IMG/VR virus record: IMGVR_UViG_3300032242_002454 | Coordinates: 62,001-126,000 of that record | DNA: 64,000 nucleotides | Strand: one strand, 5' to 3' | Shown here: positions 41,522 through 54,884 of the stretch, in pieces | Layout: every line of letters starts with the position of its first letter | How positions within the stretch are numbered: the first letter of the stretch is position 1 | Made by a program: the position numbers and the translations under genes | The notes under the pieces: model-generated | What the model saw: the letters and a program-made list of their open reading frames with translations, nothing else | Told to the model about the DNA's origin: nothing | Database searches by the model: none

Positions 41522-41608
41522 ACCTTACGAAATTGTAAGGTTGACAGCATAAAATCAGTTTGGTATAATGCACACACAAGAGAACGATAGGCCTAAGAAA
41601 GAAAAGAA

Positions 41609-41794
41609 ATGAATCGGTTTTTCAAAGCAATCGGTGAAGATGGTGAGGTGCTGGGTATGGTCATTGCAGACAACGAGAGTCGGGCGGAAGTCCAGTTTCT
41701 GTTTCAGCCGTGGTGCAGTGTTTTCACGAAGTTCACGGTAATCGAATGCAGTCGGCAAGAGTTTTTCGACAAAGAGTTTGCATCCAAAAAGTAG
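41609..41794 (+). CDS. Hypothetical early protein
   Basis: Follows promoter 41541. Confidence 0.65.
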   Translation: MNRFFKAIGEDGEVLGMVIADNESRAEVQFLFQPWCSVFTKFTVIECSRQEFFDKEFASKK

Positions 41795-41813
41795 AGAAAG
41801 AAAGAGAAAGAAA

Positions 41814-42140
41814 ATGAAAACCAAGTTTCCCATCATTCAAGCTGCCAAGCGTCAAGCCCGTCTGTGCTTTCTTGGTATGGCGATTCCAACTGAAGTGAAA
41901 GACATTGATGGTGAGATGATTCAAGTGGAAAAGGTTCTGAAGTTCAATCGAACTGCCTTGAAGAATATGGGCAAGAGCAAGATGGAAAAGGTTGACCCGC
42001 GGATGATCGGTAGCGAGGATACTATGATCGTGCCAGTGGGCAAGCCGGGTAGCCGTGAACGTGTCGAGGAATTGACCAAGCAATATGGTGTTGTTGCTCA
42101 CCTTGAAATCAGCCCGTTCAGCTTCAAGGGGGAGGAATGA
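41814..42140 (+). CDS. Hypothetical early protein
   Basis: AG-rich leader; MKTKFPIIQAAKRQARLCF. Confidence 0.7.
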   Translation: MKTKFPIIQAAKRQARLCFLGMAIPTEVKDIDGEMIQVEKVLKFNRTALKNMGKSKMEKVDPRMIGSEDTMIVPVGKPGSRERVEELTKQYGVVAHLEISPFSFKGEE

Positions 42141-42188
42141 ACGACTGTACACTAGTAAACAGATATACAGTAAACGCAAAACTTGACG

Positions 42189-42266
42189 TAAACCCTTGCT
42201 ACTAAAGGACTTAGGGCAAGGCGGGCCGCCCCGGCTCGACGTAAGTGCTTATGCAACAATGACTTA
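42189..42266 (+). repeat. Double-palindrome element E5
   Basis: taaaccctt-N7-aaggactta / 28 / taagtgctt-N7-aatgactta. Confidence 0.9.
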
Positions 42267-42275
42267 CGACGACAT

Positions 42276-42291
42276 AGCAAATGCTGTGCCA
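42276..42291 (-). promoter_or_regulatory. Sigma-54 consensus site, reverse orientation
   Basis: Minus strand TGGCACAGCATTTGCT. Confidence 0.75.
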
Positions 42292-42398
42292 AATCATGTT
42301 AGAAATACCTTACAGCATTGCAAGGAAACTTTTTCTGGTCTACCCTATTGACATTTGACGATAATACTTGTATAATGATGAGACAAGAAAGAGAAGGA

Positions 42399-42623
42399 AT
42401 GAAAATGAGAAAGCCTCCGAAAAGTTCGACTGTCAAGGGTAAAATCAATGCCTACGCTTACAAGTGTGGGTTTACGTTTCATCCGAAAGAGGATGGATCG
42501 TTTGCTCTGTTCGACATTCACATGGGATACTACGTCTGCCGTGGTTCGCATGATCGTGTTGTCCAGTTCGTGATCGATGAATTGTGGGCGAAGTATTATC
42601 GGTCGCATCCGACCCCCGTATAG
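42399..42623 (+). CDS. Hypothetical early protein
   Basis: Promoter 42348; AAGGA RBS. Confidence 0.65.
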   Translation: MKMRKPPKSSTVKGKINAYAYKCGFTFHPKEDGSFALFDIHMGYYVCRGSHDRVVQFVIDELWAKYYRSHPTPV

Positions 42624-42683
42624 TGGGGGTTGACGATCATCTGCCAAATCACTACAATACAAACACAAGAAAGAGAGAATGGA

Positions 42684-42923
42684 ATGATTCAGATTGGTGA
42701 CAGGGTTCAAATTGGTTCTAGAATTGGTGCTGATCTTGCGTGGGCTGTTGTGGTGGACATTATCCCAGCCAATGACTATAGAGAAGCTATGTATCGTGTC
42801 CGGTTCGATGTTCCTGTGAACCGTGATGGACGCAGATCAGAAATCGTAACGATCACACCTAATCCTAATGAGTGCTGGGTGGATGATGGTATTGTGTTTG
42901 GTCCGTTTCTTGAGCAAAACTGA
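42684..42923 (+). CDS. Small SH3/KOW-like beta protein
   Basis: IQIGDRVQI...AVVVDI...MYRVRFD; promoter 42630. Confidence 0.65.
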   Translation: MIQIGDRVQIGSRIGADLAWAVVVDIIPANDYREAMYRVRFDVPVNRDGRRSEIVTITPNPNECWVDDGIVFGPFLEQN

Positions 42924-42935
42924 AAGGCTGAACAA

Positions 42936-43121
42936 ATGTTCTCACCGATGGAAAAGATTTGGATGGGCCTTGGATTGCAAGGCGCTCTGGAAATGATGGA
43001 TGCGTCATGCTCCCTGTGTGAAAGACTCACGGAAGAATGTGTGACCAATCCCCCAGTGAAAGATGCTTTGATTCAAAGCATTGCTGCTGAAATTATAGGC
43101 AATCGCCAGAGTAACTCCTAA
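42936..43121 (+). CDS. Hypothetical early protein
   Basis: Its TAA stop is the first 3 nt of E6. Confidence 0.6.
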   Translation: MFSPMEKIWMGLGLQGALEMMDASCSLCERLTEECVTNPPVKDALIQSIAAEIIGNRQSNS

Positions 43122-43196
43122 GTGCTTACCGCATAAGGACTTACGACACGGCGGGCGGGCCGCGTTTGACGTAAGTTCTTATGAGATAACGACTTA
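43119..43196 (+). repeat. Double-palindrome element E6
   Basis: taagtgctt-N7-aaggactta / 28 / taagttctt-N7-aacgactta. Confidence 0.9.
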
Positions 43197-43205
43197 CAAC
43201 AACAT

Positions 43206-43221
43206 AGCAAATGCTGTGCCA
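43206..43221 (-). promoter_or_regulatory. Sigma-54 consensus site, reverse orientation
   Basis: Minus strand TGGCACAGCATTTGCT, identical to 42276. Confidence 0.75.
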
Positions 43222-43325
43222 AAGTTTCTATCCAAACCTTACGACATTGTAAGGAAAGTTTTTCTGGTCTAAGCTATTGACAAACGACGATAATAATGGT
43301 AGAATGATAAGACAAGAAAGAGAGA

Positions 43326-43508
43326 ATGAAAATGGAAGAATTTTCCACTAGGGTTTTGCAAGATAATCTGTGGCTTGAGCAAGTCCGGCTCACTAGAGAT
43401 ACTGATCCTGAAATGATCGAACTGAGAAAACAGCATATTTCCTATCTTGCCACAGAATTGCTCCGTCGGTATCGTGCGGAGTCTTTGTCTCTGGCTAGTT
43501 CCAGCTAA
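43326..43508 (+). CDS. Hypothetical early protein
   Basis: Promoter 43277. Confidence 0.65.
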   Translation: MKMEEFSTRVLQDNLWLEQVRLTRDTDPEMIELRKQHISYLATELLRRYRAESLSLASSS

Positions 43509-43645
43509 CCCTGTCGGGTTGAAACGTGGCCTAGTCAGACTAGTCAGCGAACCCTGTGGGCCTTGTAAGGTTGACAACTAAAGTTTTGCAGTGTAGAATG
43601 TCGATAATAGATATAGGAAAGATGACCAGTAACCAAGAGGAATGT

Positions 43646-43843
43646 ATGATAGACTATATCAAGCGGTATGATTGGGTGGAGTTTGATTATAAGGGTGAGA
43701 ACTATCGTGGTGAAGTTCGTAGGGTTTTGGATAAGCCCAAGGGAAAGATGATGATTGTGAAAATCGGCCTGACCGAATATCGTTCGTGCTATCTTGACCA
43801 GTGCGAAAACATGATCCATGTTGCTAACACGGTGGAGGCTTGA
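43646..43843 (+). CDS. WYL/SH3-like small protein
   Basis: VEFDYKGENYRGEV...EYRSCYLDQC resembles WYL-type folds (inference); GAGG RBS. Confidence 0.55.
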   Translation: MIDYIKRYDWVEFDYKGENYRGEVRRVLDKPKGKMMIVKIGLTEYRSCYLDQCENMIHVANTVEA

Positions 43844-44034
43844 ACATGAATGGTTTTATTCTGGTGTGGGTTTGGATGGGGGCTATGCTTTTTGTTTTGG
43901 GTTTTGTATATTTCCTTTCTATTGTAAGGGAAGTCTGGCAGAGACTTGCCGAATATGAGAGAATGAAGTCTAGGGGCTTTACTCTTATGAAAGATGAAAA
44001 TGGTGATGAGTTCTGGGTAGGATATGGGGATTGA
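43840..44034 (+). CDS. Single-TM small protein
   Basis: FILVWVWMGAMLFVLGFVYFLSIV hydrophobic segment. Confidence 0.65.
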   Translation: MNMNGFILVWVWMGAMLFVLGFVYFLSIVREVWQRLAEYERMKSRGFTLMKDENGDEFWVGYGD

Positions 44035-44215
44035 CCCAATAACACTGGAGATACAGGGATGTATCAATTTGATTTTATTAGTGTTGCTTTTGGTTATATT
44101 GTCGGTATCTTACTCTCTGCTAGTATGTCACATATCATGTATATGGAGGAAAATGATGAAATCGAGTGACTACATCTTATGGGGGGTATGTTTTACCCTT
44201 GGCTGCATTATGACG

Positions 44216-44293
44216 TATCTCCTTCACCAGTAAGGACTTACGACCAGCCCGGCCCGCCCCGCGAAGCGTAAGTGCTTATGCTGCAACACTTTA
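44216..44293 (+). repeat. Double-palindrome element E7
   Basis: tatctcctt-N7-aaggactta / 28 / taagtgctt-N7-aacacttta. Confidence 0.85.
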
Positions 44294-44423
44294 CGTCAAC
44301 AAAAAGATTTTTCATGTTTGGCATGAAATTATATTTTGGAATTTTCCAAGTTCCTGCTTGACACTAGCCGATAATAAGTGTAGAATCACAACACACGAAC
44401 GGTAACCACTAAGGAACAGAATC

Positions 44424-44597
44424 ATGCTGAACTTCGACGAGATCAACGACATTCTGAACGACATGGCCGAAGCGGGGATTGTTGAGCCGATGGTCGAGCC
44501 TATCGACGATCCTAGTGTGGAAGTGAATTTTTGGGATTGGGCAGACGTTGTGGGTGCTGTTGACGATTTCATTCCAGAGGAGTATATTGATGCTTAG
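44424..44597 (+). CDS. 57-aa acidic protein (not in track)
   Basis: MLNFDEINDILNDMAEAG...; 17 D/E and no K/R; promoter 44358, AAGGA RBS. Confidence 0.75.
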   Translation: MLNFDEINDILNDMAEAGIVEPMVEPIDDPSVEVNFWDWADVVGAVDDFIPEEYIDA

Positions 44598-44663
44598 TGC
44601 GATTGCTTTTGTTGTGAGCTATATTGGTTTGTTTTACACTATCACCATCGTGAGGGATTGACC

Positions 44664-44939
44664 ATGAGCTACGAATATGACGACCTTGAAGATTTTTATG
44701 GTATCGACGCTGATGATCGTACTAATGATTATTGGGCTGGAAATGATGATCTGGAGAATGATTCTGATGATTCGTTTGATGACAGTATGGATGGTGATGC
44801 TGAGTCTGCGTTGGCTTCCGCTGGATGGGGAACCGACGAGGACTATGGTTACTATGGTGACGATGGAGTAGAAGATTTCCATGCCGATGAGGCTGTGGGA
44901 TTCGTAGACTATAATGAGGATGGCCCATACGACGATTGA
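44664..44939 (+). CDS. Extremely acidic protein (DNA-mimic candidate)
   Basis: About 34 D/E in 91 aa, one R, no K, many Y/F/W. Confidence 0.7.
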   Translation: MSYEYDDLEDFYGIDADDRTNDYWAGNDDLENDSDDSFDDSMDGDAESALASAGWGTDEDYGYYGDDGVEDFHADEAVGFVDYNEDGPYDD

Positions 44940-44949
44940 AAATTCGCCG

Positions 44950-45027
44950 TAAACCCTTTGTGTATAAGCACTTAGGGCTTGCGCGGCCCGCCCGATTTGC
45001 TCTAAGTTCTTATTCTGCAACACTTTA
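44950..45027 (+). repeat. Double-palindrome element E8
   Basis: taaaccctt-N7-aagcactta / 28 / taagttctt-N7-aacacttta. Confidence 0.9.
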
Positions 45028-45122
45028 TGTCAACCTTGCGATATTGTAAGAAAACTATCTGCTTGACACCTAAAGTTTCTATGCTATACTTGTCGATATA
45101 AGAGATAGAGAAAGAGAGTGAC

Positions 45123-45296
45123 ATGATGAAAGTTTTGCAGTTGGTGTTGAACGGTGAGCCTCTGTCGTTTACGGTGGGAGCTACGGATTGGGCAGATGCT
45201 TGTGAAAAGTTTTCTGCTACCTACAGTTGGTTTGACGATTTGATGAAGTGTCAGTACGTTAGGATTTCTTTTCAAGAGGTTATGGGAAATGAGTAG
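45123..45296 (+). CDS. Hypothetical 57-aa protein (not in track)
   Basis: MMKVLQLVLNGEPLSF...; promoter 45063. Confidence 0.65.
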   Translation: MMKVLQLVLNGEPLSFTVGATDWADACEKFSATYSWFDDLMKCQYVRISFQEVMGNE

Positions 45297-45477
45297 GTAT
45301 TACGAAGGTCGTTTTAATCCGTACAATCGTCATGATACGGGAATGTATGTGGTCTATCGCAAGAGTGACAACAAGCATCTTGGAACGGTTGTGGATTGTC
45401 GTAGTGAGAGCGAAGCCAAGCGTAAGGCTAGCTACCAGTTTGATTGTGAGTGCTATGTTAGTGAGATTGAGGAATAA
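45289..45477 (+). CDS. Hypothetical early protein
   Basis: Coupled; GAGG RBS. Confidence 0.65.
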   Translation: MSRYYEGRFNPYNRHDTGMYVVYRKSDNKHLGTVVDCRSESEAKRKASYQFDCECYVSEIEE

Positions 45478-45478
45478 A

Positions 45479-45622
45479 ATGAAAACAAAAAAGAAAGAGT
45501 TGACAGCACACGAAAAAGCTGTTATACTCATGAATCGTGAAGCTGGTCGTGCAGTAAGTCGAGTTAAGTTGTTGGAACAGTTGTATTTTGAAACCATGAA
45601 AGCAAAGGAATTGGCAAAATGA
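45479..45622 (+). CDS. Hypothetical early protein
   Basis: GAGGA RBS before ATG 45479. Confidence 0.55.
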   Translation: MKTKKKELTAHEKAVILMNREAGRAVSRVKLLEQLYFETMKAKELAK

Positions 45623-45849
45623 AGTGCGTTGTGACTCATACGGATACGTTTGGTGGCGAAGCTAACTATGGCTGGGTGAATCGTTACGAGTTTATCCCCA
45701 AGAAGAATGCTAGCCAGCGTAGTGTTGTTCGTAAGGCTAAGGCTCTGGCTGGTATGACTGCGGTCAAGGCCGATACATGCGATTACGGCGACGGATATAC
45801 CGTCAAGCCTCGCGGTTATGCTCAGATCATCTTTGTTGATTTTGAGTAA
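45619..45849 (+). CDS. Hypothetical early protein
   Basis: ATGA-coupled; THTDTFGGEANYGWVNR. Confidence 0.7.
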   Translation: MKCVVTHTDTFGGEANYGWVNRYEFIPKKNASQRSVVRKAKALAGMTAVKADTCDYGDGYTVKPRGYAQIIFVDFE

Positions 45850-45867
45850 AAAAATAATCTCTCGTCG

Positions 45868-45945
45868 TAAACCCTTTGTGTTCAAGCACTTAGGGCCGAC
45901 GGGGGCGGCCGGATTTGCCGTAAGTCCTTATGCGTCAACACTTTA
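45868..45945 (+). repeat. Double-palindrome element E9
   Basis: taaaccctt-N7-aagcactta / 28 / taagtcctt-N7-aacacttta. Confidence 0.9.
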
Positions 45946-46043
45946 CGTCAATCCTTACAATCTCGTAAGATTCAAGTTTACCCCTTGCAATAGACGATAA
46001 TAGATAGTAGAATACGATATAGAAGAAAGGCAAGGGTGAGAGC

Positions 46044-46235
46044 ATGAGTCCTGACGGAAGCTATAATGGTTACGCAAACTATCAGACGTGGAATGTTTGT
46101 TTGTGGCTGAGTAATGATGAACTTCTGTGTAGTCTGGCTAAACAGTGTACCTCTTACGATCATTTCAAGATTTTGATTCGTGAGATTTTCGAGAAGGATA
46201 ATCTGAGGTTTGAGACTCCTGATGGTGTGGCTTGA
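46044..46235 (+). CDS. Hypothetical early protein
   Basis: YNGYANYQTWNVCLWLSND; promoter 45985. Confidence 0.7.
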   Translation: MSPDGSYNGYANYQTWNVCLWLSNDELLCSLAKQCTSYDHFKILIREIFEKDNLRFETPDGVA

Positions 46236-46377
46236 AATGACAGCGGCATCAATATTGCTGAAATGGTGGAGTATTGGGAAGAAAATTTTTCTAAAGTTCC
46301 CGCTTGACAAATGTCGATAATTAGTGTAGACTTGTGGCATGGATGTTTGATTGGTTTTCAATTTTGAAAGGGTTTCT

Positions 46378-46782
46378 ATGAGTGATACGATTTTGTTTGG
46401 TTCGATTCTTTCGGCTGTTGCCGTTGCTGTTGTGGGTTTCGTCTTCTATTCGGTCTATGGTGGATCGAAGGCTAGCTTGGCGAATGCCCAAGAGGGTCAG
46501 GTTTTCAACTTTGTTTATGAGCAGCCGTTGCATGGAACGCATGAGCGTTTTCTTGCTAAGGTGATTGGTAAGCAGACGTTGACTGTGGATCAGATTGCTA
46601 GACTCAATCGTAAGAGTCGTTATCGTGCTGGTGATCCTGAGTTCATCCGTACCAGTAATCTGGTAACGTGTCGAACCGCTGACGGCAAGGTGCGTAATTT
46701 CTATGCAGAGCGAGTGAGCAATTGCCGAAAGCCTCTTCTGGCCGGTGCTTTGTTCAAGAGTGGATTTGCTAACCTGTTCTAA
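46378..46782 (+). CDS. Membrane-anchored hypothetical protein
   Basis: N-terminal TM, then a WYL-like CRTADGKVRNFYAERV segment; promoter 46304. Confidence 0.7.
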   Translation: MSDTILFGSILSAVAVAVVGFVFYSVYGGSKASLANAQEGQVFNFVYEQPLHGTHERFLAKVIGKQTLTVDQIARLNRKSRYRAGDPEFIRTSNLVTCRTADGKVRNFYAERVSNCRKPLLAGALFKSGFANLF

Positions 46783-46818
46783 AAACTAGCAGTCTCTGCA
46801 CACTAACTGACCAACCCC

Positions 46819-46896
46819 TAACCCTTTGACACCAAAGGACTTAGGGCGAGGTCGGCCCGCCCGGCAAGTCGTAAGTCTTTATCTGACAACACTTTA
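46819..46896 (+). repeat. Double-palindrome element E10
   Basis: taacccttt-N7-aaggactta / 28 / taagtcttt-N7-aacacttta. Confidence 0.9.
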
Positions 46897-46980
46897 CGAC
46901 AATCTTTTTTGTTCAAGTTTTTCCTCTTGACAGGCCGATAATAGTAGTGTACAATACGAGGAACCTAAAGGAGAAAAAAG

Positions 46981-47256
46981 ATGCTGTTTACGCCATATGC
47001 TTTGACAAATCGGACAACGCGAACGATCACGACTGTGGACGGTGTGGATATGATTGAGTTCAGTGGGCTGTCCACTGGAGGTCGTGAGTTTTCCATCACT
47101 ACTCGACTTGACGATGCCCAGCGTTGGGTCAACGGAGAGTTGATTCAAGTTGCTTTTCCGTATCTCAATGCTGATGATCGTGAGATTCTCAAAACGGGAA
47201 TTGATGCTCAGGAGTGGGAAACGATGTTCGCAGGAACACAAGAGGAGGATGAATGA
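46981..47256 (+). CDS. Hypothetical early protein
   Basis: AAGGAG RBS; GELIQVAFPYLNADDREILKTGI. Confidence 0.75.
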   Translation: MLFTPYALTNRTTRTITTVDGVDMIEFSGLSTGGREFSITTRLDDAQRWVNGELIQVAFPYLNADDREILKTGIDAQEWETMFAGTQEEDE

Positions 47257-47402
47257 GTACCGATACCTATATGGTCATGAAGGGCAGCAAGATTGTTGGG
47301 TATGTTCAAGCGTACAGTACCTACCATGCTTTGCGTCAGGCTGAGAAACTTTATGGAAATAATTTGCTCATTGAGCGAATCTCTAAAGTTTGTCCTGCCT
47401 AA
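47253..47402 (+). CDS. Hypothetical 49-aa protein (not in track)
   Basis: GAGGAGG RBS; MSTDTYMVMKGSKIVGYV... Confidence 0.65.
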   Translation: MSTDTYMVMKGSKIVGYVQAYSTYHALRQAEKLYGNNLLIERISKVCPA

Positions 47403-47439
47403 TCCTACGGATTTGGGCTGTGTGGGTATAGTCAGCCAG
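47400..47439 (+). repeat. 40-bp family B repeat (TAATCC-N3-GGATTTGG...AGTCAGC)
   Basis: taatcctacggatttgggctgtgtgggtatagtcagccag. Confidence 0.75.
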
Positions 47440-47498
47440 TAGTCGGGACTTGACAAAGAGTCTTTGATAGAGTATATTGAGCAGAAAGGGAGAGGATT

Positions 47499-47702
47499 AT
47501 GTTGACAAGTGACGAAAGAGACGCTGTTTGTGGGTGTGTGGCTGATTTTGCTACTCGTTTGCTTACCGCTGCTACTATTGATGAGAAGTCTATGCACCAA
47601 GAACTGGATATTTTCTTTGAGTTCTTTTGTGAGGCTCTTGAGATTGCCAGAAGGGATGGGGTGGTTAGGGTTCGTGAGTCTATTGGTGCTAGTAATAACT
47701 AA
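47499..47702 (+). CDS. Hypothetical early protein
   Basis: Promoter 47450, GAGGA RBS; stop 4 nt before E11. Confidence 0.65.
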   Translation: MLTSDERDAVCGCVADFATRLLTAATIDEKSMHQELDIFFEFFCEALEIARRDGVVRVRESIGASNN

Positions 47703-47705
47703 TCG

Positions 47706-47783
47706 TAAGTCCTTATCCTTAAAGTACTTAGGGTAAGGCGGGGCGGCCGAATTTGACGTAAGTGCTTGTGTATCATAGGGTTA
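47706..47783 (+). repeat. Double-palindrome element E11
   Basis: taagtcctt-N7-aagtactta / 28 / taagtgctt-N7-atagggtta. Confidence 0.9.
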
Positions 47784-47859
47784 CATCAACTCTAAAAAAT
47801 TTTTGAAATTCCTATAGATAGGTGTTGACAACGGACGATAATAGATGTATACTTAGCAC

Positions 47860-48370
47860 ATAAGCAGATGAGGGCCTCTGGCAGAATGATATCAAAGAAG
47901 CCACGGTTAAATGCAAGGCCGAGTATGGCATAACCCAATCTGTTTATTTTACAATACAAAACTCGTGGGTCCATGCCTTGGACTAGGTTGGGATAGCCTA
48001 TTTCGATAAACACTGCGGCTGTAATGCAGCGTAGGGTTGCCAACGGGGCTATACGTTGGATAGAAGTACCAATCTATGGGGGATCGCGTCCTCACCACGT
48101 TATAATACAAGATGGCCGATGATAAAAAGACGCATAAGTCTGATCCTGTGTAGTGGATATAAAGGCATATTAAGCCACATACTACACCGGCCATCCCAAT
48201 ACAATCAGTAATCGTTCCCAAGAGCCAGACAGATTGCTTCATGAACAATCTCAGGGAGGTTTCCGTGGACGGTTTCCACTAGTGTTTACCTGGCCCAAGG
48301 GTTAAAAATATCGGGTATTAGTGGAGTATAGAACCGGAGTCGTAAATGGTTCGCTGGTTACAATACAAAG
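47860..48370 (+). ncRNA. Candidate large structured ncRNA (~510 nt, four domains joined by AAUACAA)
   Basis: Starts at the predicted +1 of promoter 47825-47853; no plausible plus-strand ORF; about 15 complementary stems found by eye; AATACAA at 47953, 48104, 48198, 48362. Confidence 0.65.
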
Positions 48371-48380
48371 GAGAAAGATA

Positions 48381-48590
48381 ATGATTGCTACAAAAGAATT
48401 GATTGCTGAAGCGAAACAACTTGCCAAAGACAACTATGAGAGTTGGGGCCAATACATAGTAGAGTGCTATGAAGATAGTGAGTTAGCCGAAAGCCTTAAA
48501 GATTTTGACAGCCTAGATGAATGGGTTGAAGTTAGAATCTCAATAGCAAACATATACGAGGAAAGAGAAGCTTTCTATGAGCAAGGATGA
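48381..48590 (+). CDS. Hypothetical protein
   Basis: AAGGAG RBS at the end of the structured region. Confidence 0.7.
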   Translation: MIATKELIAEAKQLAKDNYESWGQYIVECYEDSELAESLKDFDSLDEWVEVRISIANIYEEREAFYEQG

Positions 48591-48740
48591 AGCGATTATT
48601 AAGATTCTGAAAGTTTTGAAAAGCGCCATGATGGTGATGTGCAAGCCTAATAGGGATGAGGCATTGACTTTAGCAGAGGAGCATGGTATAACTGCTAAGG
48701 ATTTGATCGAGGTGTGGGAAAAGATAACGCTGAGGATATA

Positions 48741-48866
48741 ATGATCTACTTAAATATTAACGAGATCGAACGGTTGGCTGAAATTGTGGCTGAACTGGTT
48801 AAGTTGGATATGACTGTGATTGCTGAGTTGAAGGGGACTAAGTGGAGTATTGAGGTGACTAAATAA
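48741..48866 (+). CDS. Hypothetical 41-aa protein (not in track)
   Basis: GAGGA RBS; coupled to 48866. Confidence 0.55.
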   Translation: MIYLNINEIERLAEIVAELVKLDMTVIAELKGTKWSIEVTK

Positions 48867-49120
48867 TGGAATGGATTAGTTTTCACGGCCCTCGCCGCCC
48901 TATTAATGGTCAAAAGATAATCTATTATGGTGAGCCTATTGGTGTGTGGCGTGGAACATATAGGATAAATTATAATGATCCTTTTTGTATTCACAATATT
49001 GATTGTGGTGAAGCTCCCGGTAACGTAGACTATATGGATGCTCCGTGGTGGATGCCAGATGAGGGACAAGACAAGCCAGCACCGCCCAAAGAACATTATC
49101 CAAAAGATTATCCTAGTTGA
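48866..49120 (+). CDS. Hypothetical protein
   Basis: GAGG RBS; stop 3 nt before E12. Confidence 0.65.
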   Translation: MEWISFHGPRRPINGQKIIYYGEPIGVWRGTYRINYNDPFCIHNIDCGEAPGNVDYMDAPWWMPDEGQDKPAPPKEHYPKDYPS

Positions 49121-49122
49121 CA

Positions 49123-49200
49123 TAAGTCCTTGCTGCTAAAAGACTTAGCTCAAGGGCGCCCGGCCGGTTTCGTCGTAAGTCCTTGCTACTAAAGACTTTA
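49123..49200 (+). repeat. Double-palindrome element E12
   Basis: taagtcctt-N7-aaagactta / 28 / taagtcctt-N7-aagacttta. Confidence 0.9.
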
Positions 49201-49282
49201 CGATTAGCAATATTTCTTCAAGATTTCCTCTTGACTTGTCGATAATAGTAGTGTAAGATACTAGCAACACACGAAAGGGAAT

Positions 49283-49525
49283 ATGATGACTGTTGCTGAA
49301 CTGATCGAAGAATTGAACAAACTGCCACAAGATATGCTCGTGATGGTTCCGGGCTATGAGTGTGGATATGATAATGTTGAAGTTAGGCCTAATACTGCTG
49401 TTCGTCTAAATGATAATTGGGATGGACAAGAGAAGATTAATTGGTGGGATGGCAGACATTCTATGTCTTTCGGCCCTACTGAAGATGAGATTACGCATTG
49501 TGTTGTTCTTTGGAGAGGAAAATGA
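49283..49525 (+). CDS. Hypothetical protein
   Basis: MTVAELIEELNKLPQDMLVMV; promoter 49231. Confidence 0.7.
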   Translation: MMTVAELIEELNKLPQDMLVMVPGYECGYDNVEVRPNTAVRLNDNWDGQEKINWWDGRHSMSFGPTEDEITHCVVLWRGK

Positions 49526-50031
49526 AACAAGTAGAACTCCATGCCGAAGTGCGATTTCATCTGCTAAACGGGCCTAATTATAAAAAATGGCAAGTAAATA
49601 TTATGCAAGGTAAGAAAAGGGTTGACCAATTTTATGTAGACCCTACAGAATACCAGTTAGAGATGCGTGGTTGCAAACTGGTAAATAAGGTAGCTAGGGC
49701 AAAATGGGTCAATAAGAAACAAAAAAAGAATGTTAGTGGTTGGGTACAGTGCGAGGAGGTTATGCTTCGCAAGGATTTTTATCCCTCTTTGCCTATTGAC
49801 AATCTTGAAAAGTTGTATTACAATCCGATAAAAGATATCCATTGGCGACGAGAGAGTGATTGTGGTGAACATGTGTGGGATGATAGTGAGTATGACACCT
49901 TAGTTACCGATGGGCGACAGGTACATATTCTGGAAGAACGTGACGGAAATTTTGACGGCATTTACGAGATAGACCCTAAGTATACAGAAAGTTTTGGAAT
50001 TTATGATCAAGATCGAACTGAGCGTCCGTGA
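49522..50031 (+). CDS. Hypothetical protein
   Basis: GAGGA RBS; ATGA-coupled. Confidence 0.7.
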   Translation: MKQVELHAEVRFHLLNGPNYKKWQVNIMQGKKRVDQFYVDPTEYQLEMRGCKLVNKVARAKWVNKKQKKNVSGWVQCEEVMLRKDFYPSLPIDNLEKLYYNPIKDIHWRRESDCGEHVWDDSEYDTLVTDGRQVHILEERDGNFDGIYEIDPKYTESFGIYDQDRTERP

Positions 50032-50377
50032 GTCGTTGAACATGATTGCAAACGGTTGCAGTCTGGATATGTTCGACAAGATTGTGTGTGCGTTGGAGGT
50101 GGCGTTGGGTGTGAACCAGCGTCGTACCGTGACCATCACGGGTGGTATGACTCTCGACAATCGCATCCATTGCATCAAGGCAATTCGACTCCACACCGGA
50201 TGGGGTTTGAAGGAAGCCAAGGATTGGAGTGACTATCTGGTTGGTGGCTGGAAGTACGACAAGTGGTATCCAGCACCGGCAGGCGTTAAGCACAGCATGA
50301 CTCTGAAAACGCCCGAAGCGGCAGAGGCACTGCTGCGTGAATTGACTACCTTGGGTTGCGAGGGTTTTCTCTCTTGA
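50003..50377 (+). CDS. Ribosomal protein bL12 (L7/L12) C-terminal-domain-like protein
   Basis: NRIHCIKAIRLHTGWGLKEAKDWSD matches the bL12 CTD pattern K(I/V)xVIKxVRxxTGLGLKEAK. Confidence 0.7.
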   Translation: MIKIELSVRESLNMIANGCSLDMFDKIVCALEVALGVNQRRTVTITGGMTLDNRIHCIKAIRLHTGWGLKEAKDWSDYLVGGWKYDKWYPAPAGVKHSMTLKTPEAAEALLRELTTLGCEGFLS

Positions 50378-50379
50378 CC

Positions 50380-50457
50380 TAAAGCCTTGTCCCTAAAGAA
50401 CTTAGGGCGAGGCGGGGCGGCCGAATTTGATGTAAGTCCTTATCTGGAAAGAACTTA
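50380..50457 (+). repeat. Double-palindrome element E13
   Basis: taaagcctt-N7-aagaactta / 28 / taagtcctt-N7-aagaactta. Confidence 0.9.
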
Positions 50458-50661
50458 GGACAAAATCAAAAATCTTTGAGGCTCACTCAAGTTCATGGTT
50501 GACAATGACGATACTATACTGTAGAATGAGAGTATCACGAGACAAGACTCCGCGATGATGCCAACAACAGAAACCATCACGACGGACTTGACAAGTGGGT
50601 AACAGTAGCGTATACTGATACTAGAACGATTGGTAACTGTAACACTTTTGGAGAAGATAAG

Positions 50662-50916
50662 ATGAAGAAGTTTAGTTTTACTGTTGATGTGGTGTCTGAA
50701 GACTTGGATCGTGAGGCTACTGCCCAGACTCTTAATTTGTGTCTGACCGATTCCCTCCCCGAAGATGCTCATGCTCATGTAAAGATTGGCGAGGTTAAGG
50801 CGTTTTCTGAACAAGGTTGGAAGGTATTCCGTGCTAGGGTTATGGGTATTACGGCGAAGCAGGCTGGCGATGCCCACAATGGTAAGGTAGAGAATGAGGT
50901 TGAGACGGTTGCGTGA
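50662..50916 (+). CDS. Hypothetical protein
   Basis: Promoter 50590; GGAG RBS. Confidence 0.7.
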   Translation: MKKFSFTVDVVSEDLDREATAQTLNLCLTDSLPEDAHAHVKIGEVKAFSEQGWKVFRARVMGITAKQAGDAHNGKVENEVETVA

Positions 50917-50981
50917 CCAACTCTAAGGAGTTATAATGACTGTGAGCCTTCACGGGACGCCGTGGGGGCTTGCAGTATTAC

Positions 50982-51054
50982 GCCCCTGTAGCTCAGTAGA
51001 TAGAGCGGCGAGCTTCTACCTCGCGGGTCGGGAGTGCAACTCTCTCCAGGGGTA
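50982..51054 (+). tRNA. tRNA-Arg(TCT)
   Basis: Acceptor GCCCCTG/CAGGGGT; anticodon arm GCGAG-CTTCTAC-CTCGC; T-loop TGCAACT. Confidence 0.9.
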
Positions 51055-51540
51055 CTATATATGTGTCCATTGTTTATTAGAAACGATTCTTTTGATATGC
51101 TGATAAGAAACATTATATATTCTTCCTAAGTCAGCTAATGTATATTTATCAGTACTATATAGTATTCTAATCTCTTTAATATTCTCTTCTGAGAGTTTTG
51201 CTCTGCCATGATCGATGCCTAGTCTAGGTTTTGTTTTGTGAGATTTAGCAGTATTTGATGATCTTTCTAACCATTGTAGATTATCTATATGGTTATTAGA
51301 CATATCTCCATCAATATGGTCTATGGTGGGATGGATCATATCATTAGGTTTAGGCTCGCCCCAAACGTCCATAACTAATTGATAGATTTTTCTTCTATAT
51401 CCATTGCCAGTGTTAATAGTTAGGTAACCATCTTTGTCTTTAAATCCGATAAACTTTTGATACCTAAGACCAAAAATACGGCCATCTTTATAAACTAGAT
51501 AATTAGTATAAATTGGGTGTGTTTTTGCTTCGTTGTTCAT
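51055..51540 (-). CDS. HNH homing endonuclease with C-terminal DNA-binding domain
   Basis: TIDHIDGDMSNNHIDNLQWL; HGRAKLSE...TLADLGRIYNVS. GGAGG RBS before ATG 51540 (track start 51552). The only real minus-strand gene seen in the early region. Confidence 0.85.
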   Translation of the reverse strand: MNNEAKTHPIYTNYLVYKDGRIFGLRYQKFIGFKDKDGYLTINTGNGYRRKIYQLVMDVWGEPKPNDMIHPTIDHIDGDMSNNHIDNLQWLERSSNTAKSHKTKPRLGIDHGRAKLSEENIKEIRILYSTDKYTLADLGRIYNVSYQHIKRIVSNKQWTHI

Positions 51541-51568
51541 AATTTCCTCCATACCTTATAATACACCA

Positions 51569-51646
51569 CAAGTCCTTATTTGGCAAGTACTTAGGAGAAA
51601 TGCGGCGGGCCGGGTTTGACGTAAGTCGTTCTCGCATAAGGACTTA
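51569..51646 (+). repeat. Double-palindrome element E14
   Basis: caagtcctt-N7-aagtactta / 28 / taagtcgtt-N7-aaggactta. Confidence 0.9.
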
Positions 51647-51728
51647 GAGCAAAATATTTTTCACTAAAGAATATCTCTTGACTTAGCCGATTATTAGGTT
51701 ATACTTGATAGACACGAAAGGGAAAAGT

Positions 51729-52433
51729 ATGAAATACGCTATTGGTAATGACAAGTTGGGTAAGAATTGCTTGGTCGTGAGTCGTCCGGTTGGCGATACT
51801 TGCCCGCCCGATTGCGACTATCTTGGGAACGGATGCTATGCCGAAGCTACTGAAAATCAGTATAAAAATGCTCGCACTGCTGGATTCTCCAATATCATTA
51901 CGGAAAAGAATAAAATCCGTGCGATGATTCTGGAAGCAAAACGTACCCAAAAAAGTATTCGCTGGCAAGAACGTGGCGATTGGTTTCTCAATGGTGAACT
52001 TGACCTAGACTATGTTGCTAATGTAACGTGGGCTTGTGAGAGTATTCTTGCCGATGGTAACACTTTGCCCGATATGTGGTTTTATACTCATATCTACGAT
52101 GCTCGGCTTGTTAGTCTGGAAAAGTATATGAATGTATATGCTAGTGTGCATGACGATAATGATATGGGCGAAGCGTTGGCACAAGGTTTCAAGTTGTTTG
52201 CATGGTGTGATAGTGACATGAAGATTGCTCCCAAGCGTCCTAAGAGCAAAGTCAAGGCCGAAGCATGGCGACAAGCACTGCCCAAGCTGGTTGTTCTCAA
52301 CGCTACAAAGTTTGTGGTTTGTCCAGAAATCCGTCGTGGTCGTTCGGAAATCACTTGCACTGGCACTAAAGATAGTATATCATGTGACTTGTGTGTTCGT
52401 GGTTTGGCTAATGTCTTGTTTCCAGCCCATTGA
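51729..52433 (+). CDS. Gp88-like Cys-rich phage protein
   Basis: NDKL...TCPPDC...GCYA, RWQERGDW and C-terminal CPE...C...CDLC. Confidence 0.65.
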   Translation: MKYAIGNDKLGKNCLVVSRPVGDTCPPDCDYLGNGCYAEATENQYKNARTAGFSNIITEKNKIRAMILEAKRTQKSIRWQERGDWFLNGELDLDYVANVTWACESILADGNTLPDMWFYTHIYDARLVSLEKYMNVYASVHDDNDMGEALAQGFKLFAWCDSDMKIAPKRPKSKVKAEAWRQALPKLVVLNATKFVVCPEIRRGRSEITCTGTKDSISCDLCVRGLANVLFPAH

Positions 52434-52444
52434 AAGGAATAAAA

Positions 52445-53023
52445 ATGAGCTACGTTGGATTGTATGATGATGCAGGGAGTAAGAACGCTTTCTATATTAT
52501 CAAGGATAAAAAGATTGGCCGGAAGCGTGTGGGCTTCAAAGAGTTTGAGAATGAGCAGGAAGCTAAGTTTGCCCATCGGGTTCAAAAGCATCTGGCTCAG
52601 TTTGATTTGGCCCCTATGGTATATGGAGATGTTGGTTTTATTCGTAAACATGATGGCGAAATGACTTTTTATGGTTATTTGACCGAAGTTGCTCGGCCTA
52701 TGCCAGAGTGTAATGATGAAGATTGTTCTGGTGATTGTTTTCAGTGGTGTGAATGTAAAAATGGTACTGCTATCTCTGAAGTAGTTTGTTATTTGGGTGA
52801 ACACGGATTAGACTATAATGATGCCCATAGTGGTAATTTTGGTTATGTTCGACGCAAGGGAAAATGGATAGCGGTTGTTATCGACCTTGGAATTGAGAGC
52901 TTTACTGAATGGGATGAAGATATTTATGGGAAGTTTGATTACGATGCTGATGATGCTGTCGAGTTTGATGACTACGGCCGATGCAATTGTGTTCTATGTA
53001 AAAAGTTTCGAGAGGAACAATAA
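52445..53023 (+). CDS. Protein kinase-like (APH/Ser-Thr kinase fold) protein
   Basis: VGFK Lys motif, LAPMVYG, catalytic loop DAHSGN, DLG as the DFG equivalent. Confidence 0.75.
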   Translation: MSYVGLYDDAGSKNAFYIIKDKKIGRKRVGFKEFENEQEAKFAHRVQKHLAQFDLAPMVYGDVGFIRKHDGEMTFYGYLTEVARPMPECNDEDCSGDCFQWCECKNGTAISEVVCYLGEHGLDYNDAHSGNFGYVRRKGKWIAVVIDLGIESFTEWDEDIYGKFDYDADDAVEFDDYGRCNCVLCKKFREEQ

Positions 53024-53253
53024 TGAGCAAATACTATATCAAGTGTGGAACTCTAGAAATAATTTATTCCTGCAACAAATGCCCACGGGATGCTGCTATG
53101 GATGCTATCTGGGAAACAAATGAAAATGATACACTAGATGAGTATATCTATCTTGATGAACGTGGATATAGAGACTATAAAAATGCTGATGGTAAAACTT
53201 GTGTGTTGCATACTTCTCATATTCTCAAAGATGCTGGCTGGACATTAGAATAA
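53023..53253 (+). CDS. Hypothetical protein
   Basis: GAGG RBS; coupled. Confidence 0.65.
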   Translation: MSKYYIKCGTLEIIYSCNKCPRDAAMDAIWETNENDTLDEYIYLDERGYRDYKNADGKTCVLHTSHILKDAGWTLE

Positions 53254-53278
53254 ACATATAAAACAAAGGAGATATTTA

Positions 53279-53554
53279 ATGGAAAAGAAAGACGTACTAA
53301 ATAAGATGATTCCGGCCGATGATTTGCATTGGGTTGCTGATGAGGGTTTTGTGCTATTGAGTCTTGAAGAAGTAGAAGAGATTATTCAGACTGGGAAGGC
53401 TCAAGATATGTCTGAAGATGATATTATAAAGACCGTAAGATGGTGTGAGAGCATTAGAACCGGACAAGTATTATGGAAAAATATTCTAGCGGGAGGTATC
53501 CGTATTCATCACTTTGAAAATGACGAACCTATCTTTACGAAAGGCGTAGCGTAA
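53279..53554 (+). CDS. Hypothetical protein
   Basis: AAGGAG RBS. Confidence 0.7.
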   Translation: MEKKDVLNKMIPADDLHWVADEGFVLLSLEEVEEIIQTGKAQDMSEDDIIKTVRWCESIRTGQVLWKNILAGGIRIHHFENDEPIFTKGVA

Positions 53555-53562
53555 TCTTACCG

Positions 53563-53640
53563 CAAACCCTTGGTGCGTAAGCACTTAGGGCAAGCGGGGC
53601 CGCCCGGCTTTGACGTAAGTCCTTATCCGTCAACACTTTA
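53563..53640 (+). repeat. Double-palindrome element E15
   Basis: caaaccctt-N7-aagcactta / 28 / taagtcctt-N7-aacacttta. Confidence 0.9.
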
Positions 53641-53696
53641 GAGCAAATCTAAAAATCTTTTAAAGTTTCTCTACTAGACTGGTCGATAATATTGGT

Positions 53697-54092
53697 ATGG
53701 AAACGAAGCAAGAAATCAAAAGGAATGGACAGATGATCCAGTGGGTTGGGATTGTGATTACGATTTTGGGTTTGGCGTATACGGGAATCAAAGATTATCA
53801 AAAAGGTGATATAAAATTCCCTCCCATGCCTCAGAAACCGGCCTTGACAAAGATAGTTTATCCGGTACAATACTGTCTGATGGCTTACGACCCTAATGTT
53901 GACAAAGTTTTTTATCTACACGAAAACGGACAATGGCATGATTACGCTCCACAACAACGACGATACCAGACCACGCCGCAACCATATCAAGATCAAGGTC
54001 AGGCCGCAGTGGCAAGTTCCTACGGGTCACAAGGAACACCGCAATACTATTATGGACAATCGCCCCAAGCGTCTGCGAACCCGATCCGCTGA
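53697..54092 (+). CDS. Membrane-anchored protein with Q/Y-rich tail
   Basis: TM WVGIVITILGLAY; low-complexity C-terminus. Confidence 0.6.
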   Translation: METKQEIKRNGQMIQWVGIVITILGLAYTGIKDYQKGDIKFPPMPQKPALTKIVYPVQYCLMAYDPNVDKVFYLHENGQWHDYAPQQRRYQTTPQPYQDQGQAAVASSYGSQGTPQYYYGQSPQASANPIR

Positions 54093-54142
54093 AAAGCGTA
54101 GAGCTTGCGAGAGTGAGGATTATTGAGTATAATTAGTAGTAT

Positions 54143-54215
54143 GCCAGTGTAGCTCAGTCAGCAGAGCGTCAAATTTGTAATTTGAATGTCGCGGGTGCAA
54201 CTCCTGCCACTGGCT
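54143..54215 (+). tRNA. tRNA-Thr(TGT)
   Basis: GCCAGTG/CACTGGC; TCAAA-TTTGTAA-TTTGA; T-loop TGCAACT. Confidence 0.9.
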
Positions 54216-54281
54216 TTATGAGTCGAAAGAAAAAACGTATGTAAACGCTCTATCTGGTGTATATATTCGTATCCAGAGGAG

Positions 54282-54809: not shown

Positions 54810-54880
54810 TCCGGGATGGTGAAATGGTATCACAGCAGACTTTGGATCTGCGTTTCTACGTTCAAGTCGTAGTCCCGGAA
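54810..54880 (+). tRNA. tRNA-Gln(TTG)
   Basis: TCCGGGA/TCCCGGA; GCAGA-CTTTGGA-TCTGC. Confidence 0.9.
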
Positions 54881-54884
54881 TTAT

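What the first reader, a model, noticed from the sequence alone, without database searches (positions are those of the whole stretch)
47860..48370. Candidate ornate ~510-nt ncRNA with four multistem domains joined by AAUACAA linkers
It begins at the predicted +1 of promoter TTGACA(47825)-17-TATACT and has no credible plus-strand ORF. Domain 1: AAGCAGAT 47862/ATCTGTTT 47938, TGGC/GCCA, GGTT..ATGC/GCAT-AACC, with loop AGGCC (47916) able to pair with GGCCT (47873) as a pseudoknot. Domain 2: closed by CGTGG 47964/CCACG 48095, with six hairpins (GTCCA/TGGAC, TAGGTT/AGCCTA, GCTG/CAGC, CCAACG/CGTTGG, ATAGA/TCTAT, GGGGA/TCCTC). Domain 3: GATGGCCG 48111/CGGCCATC 48188, AGAC/GTCT, GTGTAGT/ACTACAC, GGC/GCC. 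Domain 4: GCCAG/CTGGC, AGATTG/CAATCT, GTGGA/TCCAC, GAACC/GGTTC. AATACAA recurs at the domain boundaries (47953, 48104, 48198, 48362); the last copy runs into the RBS of 48381. Phages are known to carry large ornate RNAs (GOLLD, ROOL), often near tRNAs; I cannot match this one to them by eye. The repeated linker could be a protein-binding or processing site.
Basis: partly seen in the sequence, partly recalled or inferred. Interest (0 to 1): 0.85.

Follow-up and report, generated by a model that had tools for sequence, protein, structure and literature searches.

The report
Phage array of small structured RNAs
The 510-base stretch is not one large RNA: it is a string of four separately folding small RNAs joined by a fixed AAUACAA spacer, part of a mix-and-match set of undescribed structured RNAs made early in infection by large uncultured freshwater phages.

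Summary
The observation largely holds. A consensus promoter (47825-47853) leads into about 520 non-coding bases, which fall into four folded domains separated by AATACAA at 47953, 48104, 48198 and 48362. The last copy abuts the ribosome-binding site of the 48381 gene.

Three domains are real RNA structures by comparative evidence:
- M1: 44 distinct sequences counted (62 found), 95% of cells paired, 20 of 28 pairs with double changes.
- M2: 90 distinct sequences, 97% paired, 23 of 41 pairs, including a pseudoknot.
- M4: 24-96 sequences, 96% paired.

M3 has one near-identical relative, so it rests only on folding energy (z = -5.1).

These include the M1 pseudoknot, two M2 hairpins and two M4 helices.

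The "single ornate RNA" reading is not supported. In about 170 related phage contigs the domains, and at least 10 other module types including tRNA-like elements, are inserted, duplicated, lost or moved, with break points at the spacer. No Rfam family matches.

My best reading is a punctuated precursor of independent small stable RNAs, cut in the spacer as in tRNA operons and acting in trans. Their function is unknown. M1 carries a loop palindrome that stays palindromic through compensating changes, which suggests a kissing-loop dimer.

The parts
47701..47799 (+). Copy of a dispersed, partly palindromic ~90-bp intergenic repeat that precedes early promoters, followed by an A/T tract
   Evidence: nhmmer finds at least 14 copies between 39.5 and 57.7 kb in the window, many of them matching on both strands. 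The same element is repeated in related loci.
47825..47853 (+). Sigma-70-type early promoter TTGACA-17-TATACT; predicted start near 47860
   Evidence: The promoter scan gives 11 of 12 consensus matches. It is one of about 30 near-consensus promoters between 38.6 and 62.8 kb. The start site itself is inferred, not mapped.
47862..47945 (+). Module M1. The outer helix pairs 47862-47869 with 47938-47945 and extends as 47871-47874 with 47934-47937. The second helix pairs 47875-47882 with 47900-47906. Its 17-nt loop holds the palindrome UGAUAUCA at 47887-47894. The 3' sub-domain is nearly invariant and its fold is unresolved.
   Evidence: The covariance model scores 106.3 bits at 47859-47949. Over 44 distinct sequences 95.0% of cells are paired, against 23-42% when partners are slid, and 20 of 28 pairs carry double changes. 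The loop palindrome is perfect in all 62 distinct copies, in three sequence versions. The window copy has one G-to-T mismatch in the second helix, at 47877.
47951..47959 (+). Punctuation 1, ACAATACAA
   Evidence: It is unpaired in the minimum-free-energy fold of the whole region.
47964..48099 (+). Module M2. Helices: P1 47964-68/48095-99; P2 47969-73/47979-83; P3 47984-91/48069-76; P6 47999-48004/48063-68; variable hairpin P7 about 48011-48037; P5 48040-45/48054-59; pseudoknot P4 47993-98/48047-52, whose 3' strand lies in the P5 loop; P8 48079-48092.
   Evidence: The covariance model scores 156.6 bits, and this is the only copy in the window. Over 90 distinct sequences 97.0% of cells are paired, against 35-40% slid, and 23 of 41 pairs carry double changes. 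The pseudoknot covaries although it was not part of the model. An independent MAFFT alignment gives 97.4% paired. G-U pairs fit the + strand.
48102..48110 (+). Punctuation 2, ATAATACAA
48111..48195 (+). Module M3. The closing stem pairs 48111-18 with 48188-95, enclosing two hairpins, and is followed by CCA.
Evidence: The only relative is L126:2187-2283. It is identical except for a 2-nt deletion in a predicted loop, and it sits between a different M2 and M4. No covariation test is possible.
48196..48204 (+). Punctuation 3, CCAATACAA
48205..48357 (+). Module M4. Helix a pairs 48205-08 with 48354-57. Long-range helix b pairs 48210-14 with 48270-74. A variable hairpin pairs 48231-36 with 48246-51. 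Helix e pairs 48276-84 with 48316-24. Helix f pairs 48331-35 with 48348-52 and closes a conserved loop, GGRNCGUAAAW.
   Evidence: Over 24 sequences 95.9% of cells are paired, against 22-48% slid, and 8 of 23 pairs carry double changes. Over 96 distinct copies helix f covaries strongly and helix b shows the series C-G, U-G, U-A. Peripheral domains vary or are absent, for example in L038.
48360..48368 (+). Punctuation 4, ACAATACAA, overlapping the start of the ribosome-binding site AAGGAG (48368-48373)
48381..48590 (+). First downstream gene (69 aa, no known family), apparently co-transcribed with the array
   Evidence: It is conserved at 78-100% in relatives. No credible terminator lies between the array and the gene; the one scan hit falls inside M4.

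Best explanation
A strong early promoter transcribes a punctuated precursor that carries four independent small structured RNAs: M1 (~85 nt), M2 (~136 nt, pseudoknotted three-way junction), M3 (~85 nt) and M4 (~153 nt). Each is closed by its own terminal helix. Each is separated from the next by the single-stranded motif (A/Y)CA-AUACAA.

Shown here: the promoter motif, the folds of M1, M2 and M4 by covariation, the strand, the conservation of the linker, and the modular gain, loss, duplication and relocation of units at the linker in about 170 related phage contigs.

Inferred: the linker is read by a sequence-specific endonuclease, either a host RNase E-like enzyme or a phage enzyme. The ends are then trimmed back to the closing helices, as in tRNA operons, where these modules sometimes sit. 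The released stable RNAs act in trans on host or phage macromolecules during early infection. M1 probably pairs with a second M1 through its palindromic loop. The short conserved linker also serves as the homology at which units are exchanged between phages.
For: Structure:
- M2 is 97.0% paired with 23 of 41 pairs showing double changes, including a pseudoknot that was outside the model.
- M1 is 95.0% paired with 20 of 28 pairs showing double changes.
- M4 is 95.9% paired with 8 of 23 pairs showing double changes.
- M3 has z = -5.07.

Independence of the units:
- Array architectures differ by whole units.
- M2-M4 junctions with and without E, G, M3 or F+M2'+E share the same linker.
- M1 lies 1-2 kb from M2 in several loci and abuts a tRNA in L032.
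- Each module is single-copy in the window.
- In L004, L006 and L007 the array ends in the intergenic repeat plus a new promoter, so there it is a stand-alone unit.

Linker:
- AATACAA occurs 146 times forward and 24 times reverse in 153 kb of array regions, with consensus A-C/T-A-ATACAA.
- ATACAA lies within 8 nt downstream of M2 in 64 of 90 distinct copies, while the adjoining helices vary.
- The linkers are unpaired in the minimum-free-energy fold.

tRNA-operon likeness:
- tRNA-like elements and tRNAs lie inside or next to arrays.
- 46% of M2 copies end in helix + NCCA, and M3 ends in helix + CCA.

Early expression: there are about 30 consensus promoters in this region.

M1 dimer: an 8-nt loop palindrome is kept in 62 of 62 copies through UA-to-CG and G/C-to-A/U double changes.
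Against: - There are no transcript data, so cleavage at the linker, the stability of the pieces and even the start site are all inferred.
- In the window the array runs straight into a ribosome-binding site, which also fits a leader role.
- Part of the linker (ACAA) is also the start of primary transcripts and of mRNA leaders in this phage. It may therefore be a 5' tail of each module rather than a cleavage signal.
- Linkers are degenerate at some junctions.
- NCCA is absent from the window's own M2.
- M3 has no comparative support.
- The palindrome changes come from few lineages, two or three events.
- The host and any partner molecule are unknown.
Confidence: 0.55

Rival explanations
1. This is the reader's view: a single large multi-domain ornate RNA (GOLLD/ROOL-like) whose four domains work together, with the linkers acting as hinges.
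For: All four domains share one promoter with no terminator between them. Phage ornate RNAs occur near tRNAs (my own knowledge). The M1 loop palindrome hints at RNA-RNA assembly.
Against: Domains occur in many different combinations, orders and copy numbers, and M1 also occurs alone elsewhere. M3 is present in only two contigs. There is no Rfam hit. No inter-domain pairing turned up in the analyses, although none was searched for systematically. The whole-region z-score is only -1.5.
Confidence: 0.1
2. The region is a cis-acting 5' leader of the 48381 operon. It would be a structured stabiliser or a tandem sensor controlling translation or decay of the downstream early mRNA.
For: The last linker overlaps the ribosome-binding site, and there is no terminator before 48381. 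The same junction is kept in L001, L002, L003 and L005.
Against: In L004, L006 and L007 the array is followed by the intergenic repeat and a fresh promoter before the next gene. Modules also sit in tRNA clusters and other positions. No expression platform links M4 to the ribosome-binding site. The other roughly 30 early genes have short ACAAGAAAGAG-type leaders.
Confidence: 0.12
3. The transcript is an unprocessed sponge. It would display repeated single-stranded AAUACAA sites between structured spacers to titrate a host RNA-binding protein, as CsrB/RsmZ do for CsrA and CrcZ does for Hfq.
For: The short single-stranded motif is repeated and conserved in sequence, and expression is probably high and early.
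Against: Simple spacers would not need pseudoknots, invariant loops or covarying long-range helices. Modules keep their sequence when they occur singly. Three or four sites is a small number for a sponge.
Confidence: 0.1
4. The units are DNA-level elements: recombination cassettes, protein-binding sites, an origin, or MITE-like mobile units with inverted ends inserted at an AATACAA target.
For: The units have inverted termini and are flanked by a repeated 7-mer that looks like a target duplication. The M1 loop palindrome could be a dimeric protein's DNA site.
Against: The helices contain many G-U pairs that would be A-C on the other strand. Internal long-range helices and pseudoknots covary. 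The linker is strongly strand-biased, 146 to 24. Each unit is single-copy rather than dispersed. No transposase or integrase was seen in the neighbourhood examined.
Confidence: 0.05

Closest known systems
Small stable RNAs of phage tRNA regions (T4 RNAC and RNAD)
   Same: They are phage-encoded small RNAs transcribed with or next to tRNA genes, are presumably cut out of a precursor, and have no known role. [quoted passage not shown] Here modules lie beside tRNAs and tRNA-like elements.
   Different: No homology is claimed. Rfam holds no matching family and I did not compare sequences directly. T4 has two such RNAs, whereas this clade has 15 or more module types in variable arrays with a fixed AAUACAA punctuation.
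GOLLD, ROOL and OLE large ornate RNAs
   Same: They are complex conserved folds, GOLLD and ROOL are often in phages near tRNAs, and their function is unknown. They self-assemble through RNA-RNA contacts (preprint 10.1101/2024.12.08.627333, listed), which the M1 palindrome may echo.
   Different: Those are single RNAs of hundreds of nucleotides. Here the domains are independent 85-155-nt units, and there is no covariance-model match.
Type III antitoxin arrays (ToxI) and CRISPR arrays: tandem RNA units cut at a fixed short site
   Same: Both are tandem units released by an endonuclease that reads a short repeated signal (my own knowledge).
   Different: ToxI units are identical 36-nt repeats placed next to their toxin gene. 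CRISPR repeats are 25-40 nt. Here the units are all different, large and individually structured, the repeat is only 7-9 nt, and no nuclease gene is adjacent.
Bacterial tRNA operons processed by RNase E, RNase P and exonucleases
   Same: Structured units are closed by a terminal helix, often followed by NCCA and an A/U-rich single-stranded trailer. Real tRNAs are interleaved with the modules in relatives.
   Different: Apart from module J in relatives, the units are not tRNAs: ARAGORN and Rfam are negative in the region. The trailer is sequence-conserved.
Kissing-loop dimerisation sites such as the HIV-1 DIS
   Same: A self-complementary stretch in a purine-flanked hairpin loop stays self-complementary through paired changes. 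The comparison itself rests on my own knowledge.
   Different: The M1 palindrome is 8 nt in a 17-nt loop. Dimerisation has not been tested.

Membership tests
GOLLD / ROOL / OLE and any other Rfam 15 family | Match to the family covariance model at or near its gathering score | tested here: not met
   At gathering thresholds the window shows only tRNAs, at 54143-55600. With E up to 10 over 47650-48450 there are only chance-level hits: JA03 at 23 bits against a threshold of 44 and on the minus strand, and snoRNA models at E about 1. Across 41 related loci only tRNA and Pistol match.
tRNA | Cloverleaf with an anticodon loop, detected by ARAGORN or RF00005 | tested here: not met
   There is no tRNA call in 47860-48370. 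tRNA-like elements occur in other modules of relatives, not in the window array.
C/D box RNA (raised by the weak Rfam hits on M3) | A C box RUGAUGA and a D box CUGA placed next to the terminal stem | tested here: not met
   The hits score 18-21 bits against thresholds of 36-52. AUGAUAA is a 6-of-7 match to the C box, but CUGA lies mid-molecule, not beside the 3' strand of the stem.
Type III antitoxin (ToxI-like) array | Tandem near-identical short repeats next to an endoribonuclease toxin gene | tested here: not met
   The four units are unrelated in sequence. The neighbouring ORFs are 50-90 aa and match no family.
Cis-regulatory riboswitch or leader | Fixed position upstream of one gene family, with an expression platform | tested here: not met
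   Modules occur ahead of different genes, ahead of a promoter, and inside tRNA clusters.
Phage small stable RNA co-transcribed with tRNAs (T4 RNAC/RNAD kind) | Discrete stable RNA species excised from a precursor | not testable with these tools
   This needs transcript data. Only the genomic arrangement is consistent with it.
Structured non-coding RNA (general) | Base pairs kept by compensatory changes, strand-specific G-U pairs, and no coding signal | tested here: met
   Met for M1, M2 and M4. For M3 the test is inconclusive, since it has only a z-score of -5.07 and one near-identical relative.
Self-cleaving ribozyme | Site-specific self-scission, or a match to a known ribozyme model | tested here: inconclusive
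   No ribozyme model matches in the array, although Pistol ribozymes occur elsewhere in relatives. Catalysis cannot be tested in silico.

The most novel reading that the evidence does not exclude
The arrays could be a phage 'RNA cassette' system: a fast-exchanging repertoire of aptamer-like and tRNA-like RNAs made at the very start of infection, each of which neutralises or hijacks a different host factor, for example defence nucleases or RNA-processing proteins. The AAUACAA punctuation would serve both as the RNA processing signal and as the micro-homology for swapping cassettes between phages. M1 would act as a kissing-loop dimer. Precedents for RNA-based counter-defence exist: RNA anti-CRISPRs (PMC10651486) and a viral tRNA that neutralises PARIS (PMC11464382), both listed.
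Probability: 0.2. Interest if true: 0.9.

Novelty: new variant of a known kind. Interest (0 to 1): 0.72.

Why it matters
- It adds at least three covariation-supported structured RNA classes (M1, M2, M4) that are absent from Rfam 15, and points to a dozen or more others.
- All sit in one kind of locus in abundant, uncultured ~150-240-kb freshwater phages.
- A combinatorial, punctuated arrangement of unrelated structured RNAs has, to my knowledge, not been described.
- It offers a tractable entry to the old question of what the non-tRNA small RNAs of phage tRNA regions do.
- M2 is compact, pseudoknotted and has a dispensable peripheral hairpin, and M1 may dimerise. Both are good targets for structure determination.
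- If the units prove to be decoys or inhibitors of host factors, this would be an RNA counterpart of the protein anti-defence gene clusters found in phage early regions.

Tried and rejected
- Rfam at gathering and at permissive thresholds, on the window and 41 related loci, gave nothing but tRNA and Pistol.
- The GenBank phage collection has no DNA relative of the region. The only hits to the surrounding 8 kb are tRNA-Arg genes of mycobacteriophages.
- The large terminase is only 24% identical to siphoviruses of Bacillus and Microcystis, so the host stays unknown.
- A genome-collection scan gave one real hit: a 17.7-kb phage-like contig binned in a Ca. Planktophila MAG. This is weak host evidence. 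The other two hits are chance.
- My first pattern for M3 had the wrong spacing, so that scan was wasted. The corrected scan found only chance hits plus the window's own contig.
- Linkers as promoters, since TACAAT resembles a -10 box: rejected, because there is no -35 box at the right spacing upstream of M2 (my reading) and no room between the -10 box and the module.
- Hidden coding: rejected.
- Pfam and PHROGs on 30 ORFs of the window found no RNA-processing enzyme, Ro60 or RNA ligase.
- Literature searches found no description of such arrays or of the motif.
- The fold of the M1 3' sub-domain (47907-47933) stays unresolved because it is almost invariant.

Full report
**What is there.** Window 47703-48380 is an ORF-poor gap between two small + strand genes, 47499-47702 and 48381-48590. 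A near-consensus sigma-70-type promoter, TTGACA-17-TATACT, lies at 47825-47853. It is one of about 30 such promoters between 38.6 and 62.8 kb, a layout typical of a phage early region made of many short transcription units. The window comes from a 204-kb IMG/VR contig. It has a large terminase, tail-fibre genes and eight tRNAs but no close cultured relative. A 7-mer recurring that often arose in 29 of 5000 dinucleotide shuffles. The last copy overlaps the ribosome-binding site of 48381.

**Known families.** Rfam 15 gives no hit in the region at gathering thresholds and only chance-level hits up to E = 10. ARAGORN finds no tRNA there. The full 511 nt folds only slightly better than shuffles, with z = -1.5 on the + strand and -2.05 on the minus strand.

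**Relatives and modularity.**
- The downstream 69-aa protein retrieved seven IMG/VR loci.
- A conserved M2 core pattern retrieved 50 more loci.
- Splitting the intergenic regions at the linker shows the region is a chain of units that differ between otherwise collinear phages.
- Seed searches give these architectures: M1-M2-M3-M4 in the window; M1-M2-M4-J, the commonest; M1-M2-E-M4-J; M1-M2-F-M2'-E-M4-J; M1-M2-M2'-G-M4; H-M1-K-M2-F-M4; K-M2-M4; and M2-M4 with M1 1-2 kb downstream.
- The slot between M2 and M4 holds nothing, E, G, M3, or several units, and the junctions always fall at the linker.
- Segments bounded by exact linkers fall into about 38 clusters, of which I judge at least 15 to be distinct structured types.
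- In L004, L006 and L007 the array is followed by the dispersed intergenic repeat and a new promoter, so there it is a stand-alone non-coding unit.
- In L032, M1 directly abuts a tRNA cluster.
- Each of M1-M4 is single-copy in the window.

**M2 (47964-48099).**
- On a MAFFT alignment of 35 distinct copies my structure gave 97.4% paired cells against 31-42% for slid partners, with 16 of 41 pairs showing double changes.
- A covariance model found one copy in the window, at 156.6 bits, and 101 copies in the metagenome loci.
- On 90 distinct sequences 97.0% of cells pair, and 23 of 41 pairs show double changes.
- P3 covaries. It could not be tested in the first set because that set was ascertained on its 3' strand.
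- The pseudoknot P4, whose 3' strand lies in the P5 loop, also covaries although it was not part of the model.
- The fold is P1 enclosing hairpin P2, then a P3-P6 stack leading to a three-way junction with P7 and P5, then hairpin P8.
- P7 varies in length and sequence and is missing in mini-variants of about 121 nt.
- About 46% of distinct copies carry NCCA immediately after P1. The window's copy does not.

**M1 (47862-47945).**
- The first 18 sequences were 84% identical and settled only the outer helix.
- A covariance model found 62 distinct copies, including divergent ones.
- With these, the outer helix shows double changes at 11 of 12 pairs and the second helix at 7 of 7. Overall 95.0% of cells pair against 23-42% when slid.
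- The 17-nt loop of the second helix contains a perfect 8-nt palindrome in all 62 copies: UGAUAUCA in 58, UGACGUCA in 2 and UAACGUUA in 2.
- A palindrome with no room for a loop cannot fold on itself. The simplest reading is pairing between two M1 molecules. This rests on few independent changes.
- The 3' sub-domain is nearly invariant and its fold is open.

**M4 (48205-48357).**
- On 24 sequences 95.9% of cells pair against 22-48% when slid, with 8 of 23 pairs showing double changes.
- On 96 distinct copies helix f covaries at four positions, and the long-range helix b shows the series C-G, U-G, U-A.
- Two peripheral domains come in several unrelated versions or are absent.
- One-sided changes in those helices are left uncompensated. 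The bases of TCCAC instead pair downstream in helix e, which does covary.

**M3 (48111-48195).**
- The only relative, L126:2187-2283, is identical apart from a 2-nt deletion in a predicted loop. It lies between a different M2 and M4.
- Structure therefore rests on thermodynamics alone: z = -5.07, with no shuffle out of 200 as stable.
- Its 8-bp closing stem is followed by CCA and then the linker.

**Strand and coding.** G-U pairs are frequent in the helices (for example 19 of 85 at one P3 position), which fits the + strand. Homologue lengths fall in all classes modulo 3, and no frame stays open across the M2 or M4 homologues. The minus-strand frame that is stop-free in all 18 M1 copies is not supported by the substitution pattern. 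The window's 83-aa and 99-aa minus-strand ORFs are therefore spurious.

**The linker.**
- Across array regions AATACAA occurs 146 times forward and 24 times reverse. The wider consensus is A-(C/T)-A-ATACAA.
- Next to M2, ATACAA lies within 8 nt downstream in 64 of 90 distinct copies and upstream in 43 of 90. ACAA(A) lies upstream in 74 of 90.
- The sequence is kept while the adjacent helices change by covariation. That points to a reader of sequence rather than a mere spacer; this is inference.
- A caveat: where M2 is the first unit after a promoter, the transcript should begin around ACAAAC, and the phage's mRNA leaders begin ACAAGAAAGAG. Part of the motif may therefore be a common 5' tail.

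**Mechanism.** I commit to a punctuated precursor of independent small RNAs, cut in the linker and trimmed to the closing helices as in tRNA operons, with the products acting in trans early in infection. The folds, the modularity, the conserved linker and the association with tRNAs and tRNA-like elements are shown. Cleavage, stability and targets are inferred. The rivals are a single ornate RNA, a cis-acting leader, a protein sponge and DNA-level elements. They are weighed in the structured fields, and each conflicts with at least one observation above.

**Comparison and novelty.** The nearest known things are the small RNAs of the T4 tRNA region, whose roles are still unknown (PMC3014915). 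By analogy only, other comparisons are tRNA operons, ToxI or CRISPR-type processed arrays, and ornate phage RNAs. None of their defining features that I could test is met, except the general definition of a structured non-coding RNA. Literature searches found no description of such arrays or of the motif. I rate it a new variant of a known kind, namely phage small stable RNAs. It brings several new RNA classes and an unusual cassette-like organisation.

Noticed in passing
window 39523-57698 (at least 14 copies, e.g. 47701-47799, 40463-40549, 50379-50445): A dispersed ~90-bp, partly palindromic intergenic repeat sits just upstream of many early promoters. It contains CGTAAGT/ACTTACG-type half sites around a GC-rich core (GGCGGGCGGCCG). 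It could be a terminator or a regulator-binding site.
   Followed up: partly
window 38685-62835: About 30 near-consensus sigma-70 promoters (TTGACA-N17-TAnAAT) are present. Many share the spacer GACGATAATA and a leader that begins ACAAGAAAGAG. Almost every small early ORF has its own promoter.
   Followed up: partly
L003:4882-4953, L026:4173-4245, L046:10347-10421, L022:6011-6086, L025:12484-12560: Module J of relatives embeds a tRNA-like element. It has an acceptor stem, a D arm and a T arm, but the anticodon arm ends in a GNRA-like or other odd loop. It sits inside a larger conserved RNA closed by GATACCGG/CCGGTATAC. L005 has a degenerate copy.
   Followed up: partly
L007:1782-1880, L031:5309-5408, L045:788-886: A ~99-nt tRNA-like gene (module K) scores 32-35 bits on RF00005 and carries a long insertion or variable region. 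ARAGORN does not call it.
   Followed up: no
L006:8237-8299, L016:3945-4007, L024:3402-3464, L093:802-865, L125:9687-9749, L130:5339-5401: Pistol self-cleaving ribozymes (50-56 bits) lie about 150-200 nt upstream of a tRNA gene in relatives. None was found in the window.
   Followed up: no
L058 (JBJTKU010000149.1, 17.7 kb): A contig binned in a Candidatus Planktophila MAG is clearly a relative of this phage. It carries a mini-M2 without P7 and several very short hairpin modules between linkers. It is either a binning artefact or a hint to the host.
   Followed up: partly
window 1019-13090 (-) and 18766-26174 (-): There is a 4023-aa ORF, and three paralogous tail-fibre-like ORFs that each begin with an Mtd_N domain, the kind of target used by diversity-generating retroelements. 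GC content rises from about 31-37% in the structural half to about 41-45% in the early half.
   Followed up: no
window 54962-55048: ARAGORN reports a tRNA-Ser with the unusual anticodon ACT inside the tRNA cluster.
   Followed up: no
window 51055-51552 (-): An HNH endonuclease gene lies immediately next to tRNA-Arg(TCT) at 50982-51055.
   Followed up: no
window 47877: The window's M1 has T where 17 of 18 relatives have G. This breaks a G-C pair of the covarying second helix, so this copy may be slightly weakened.
   Followed up: partly
M2, window 47972-47975 and 48085-48088: The near-invariant AUGC in the P2 loop is complementary to GCRU in the P8 loop or stem. This could be a tertiary loop-loop contact, but both sides are almost invariant, so it cannot be tested.
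   Followed up: no
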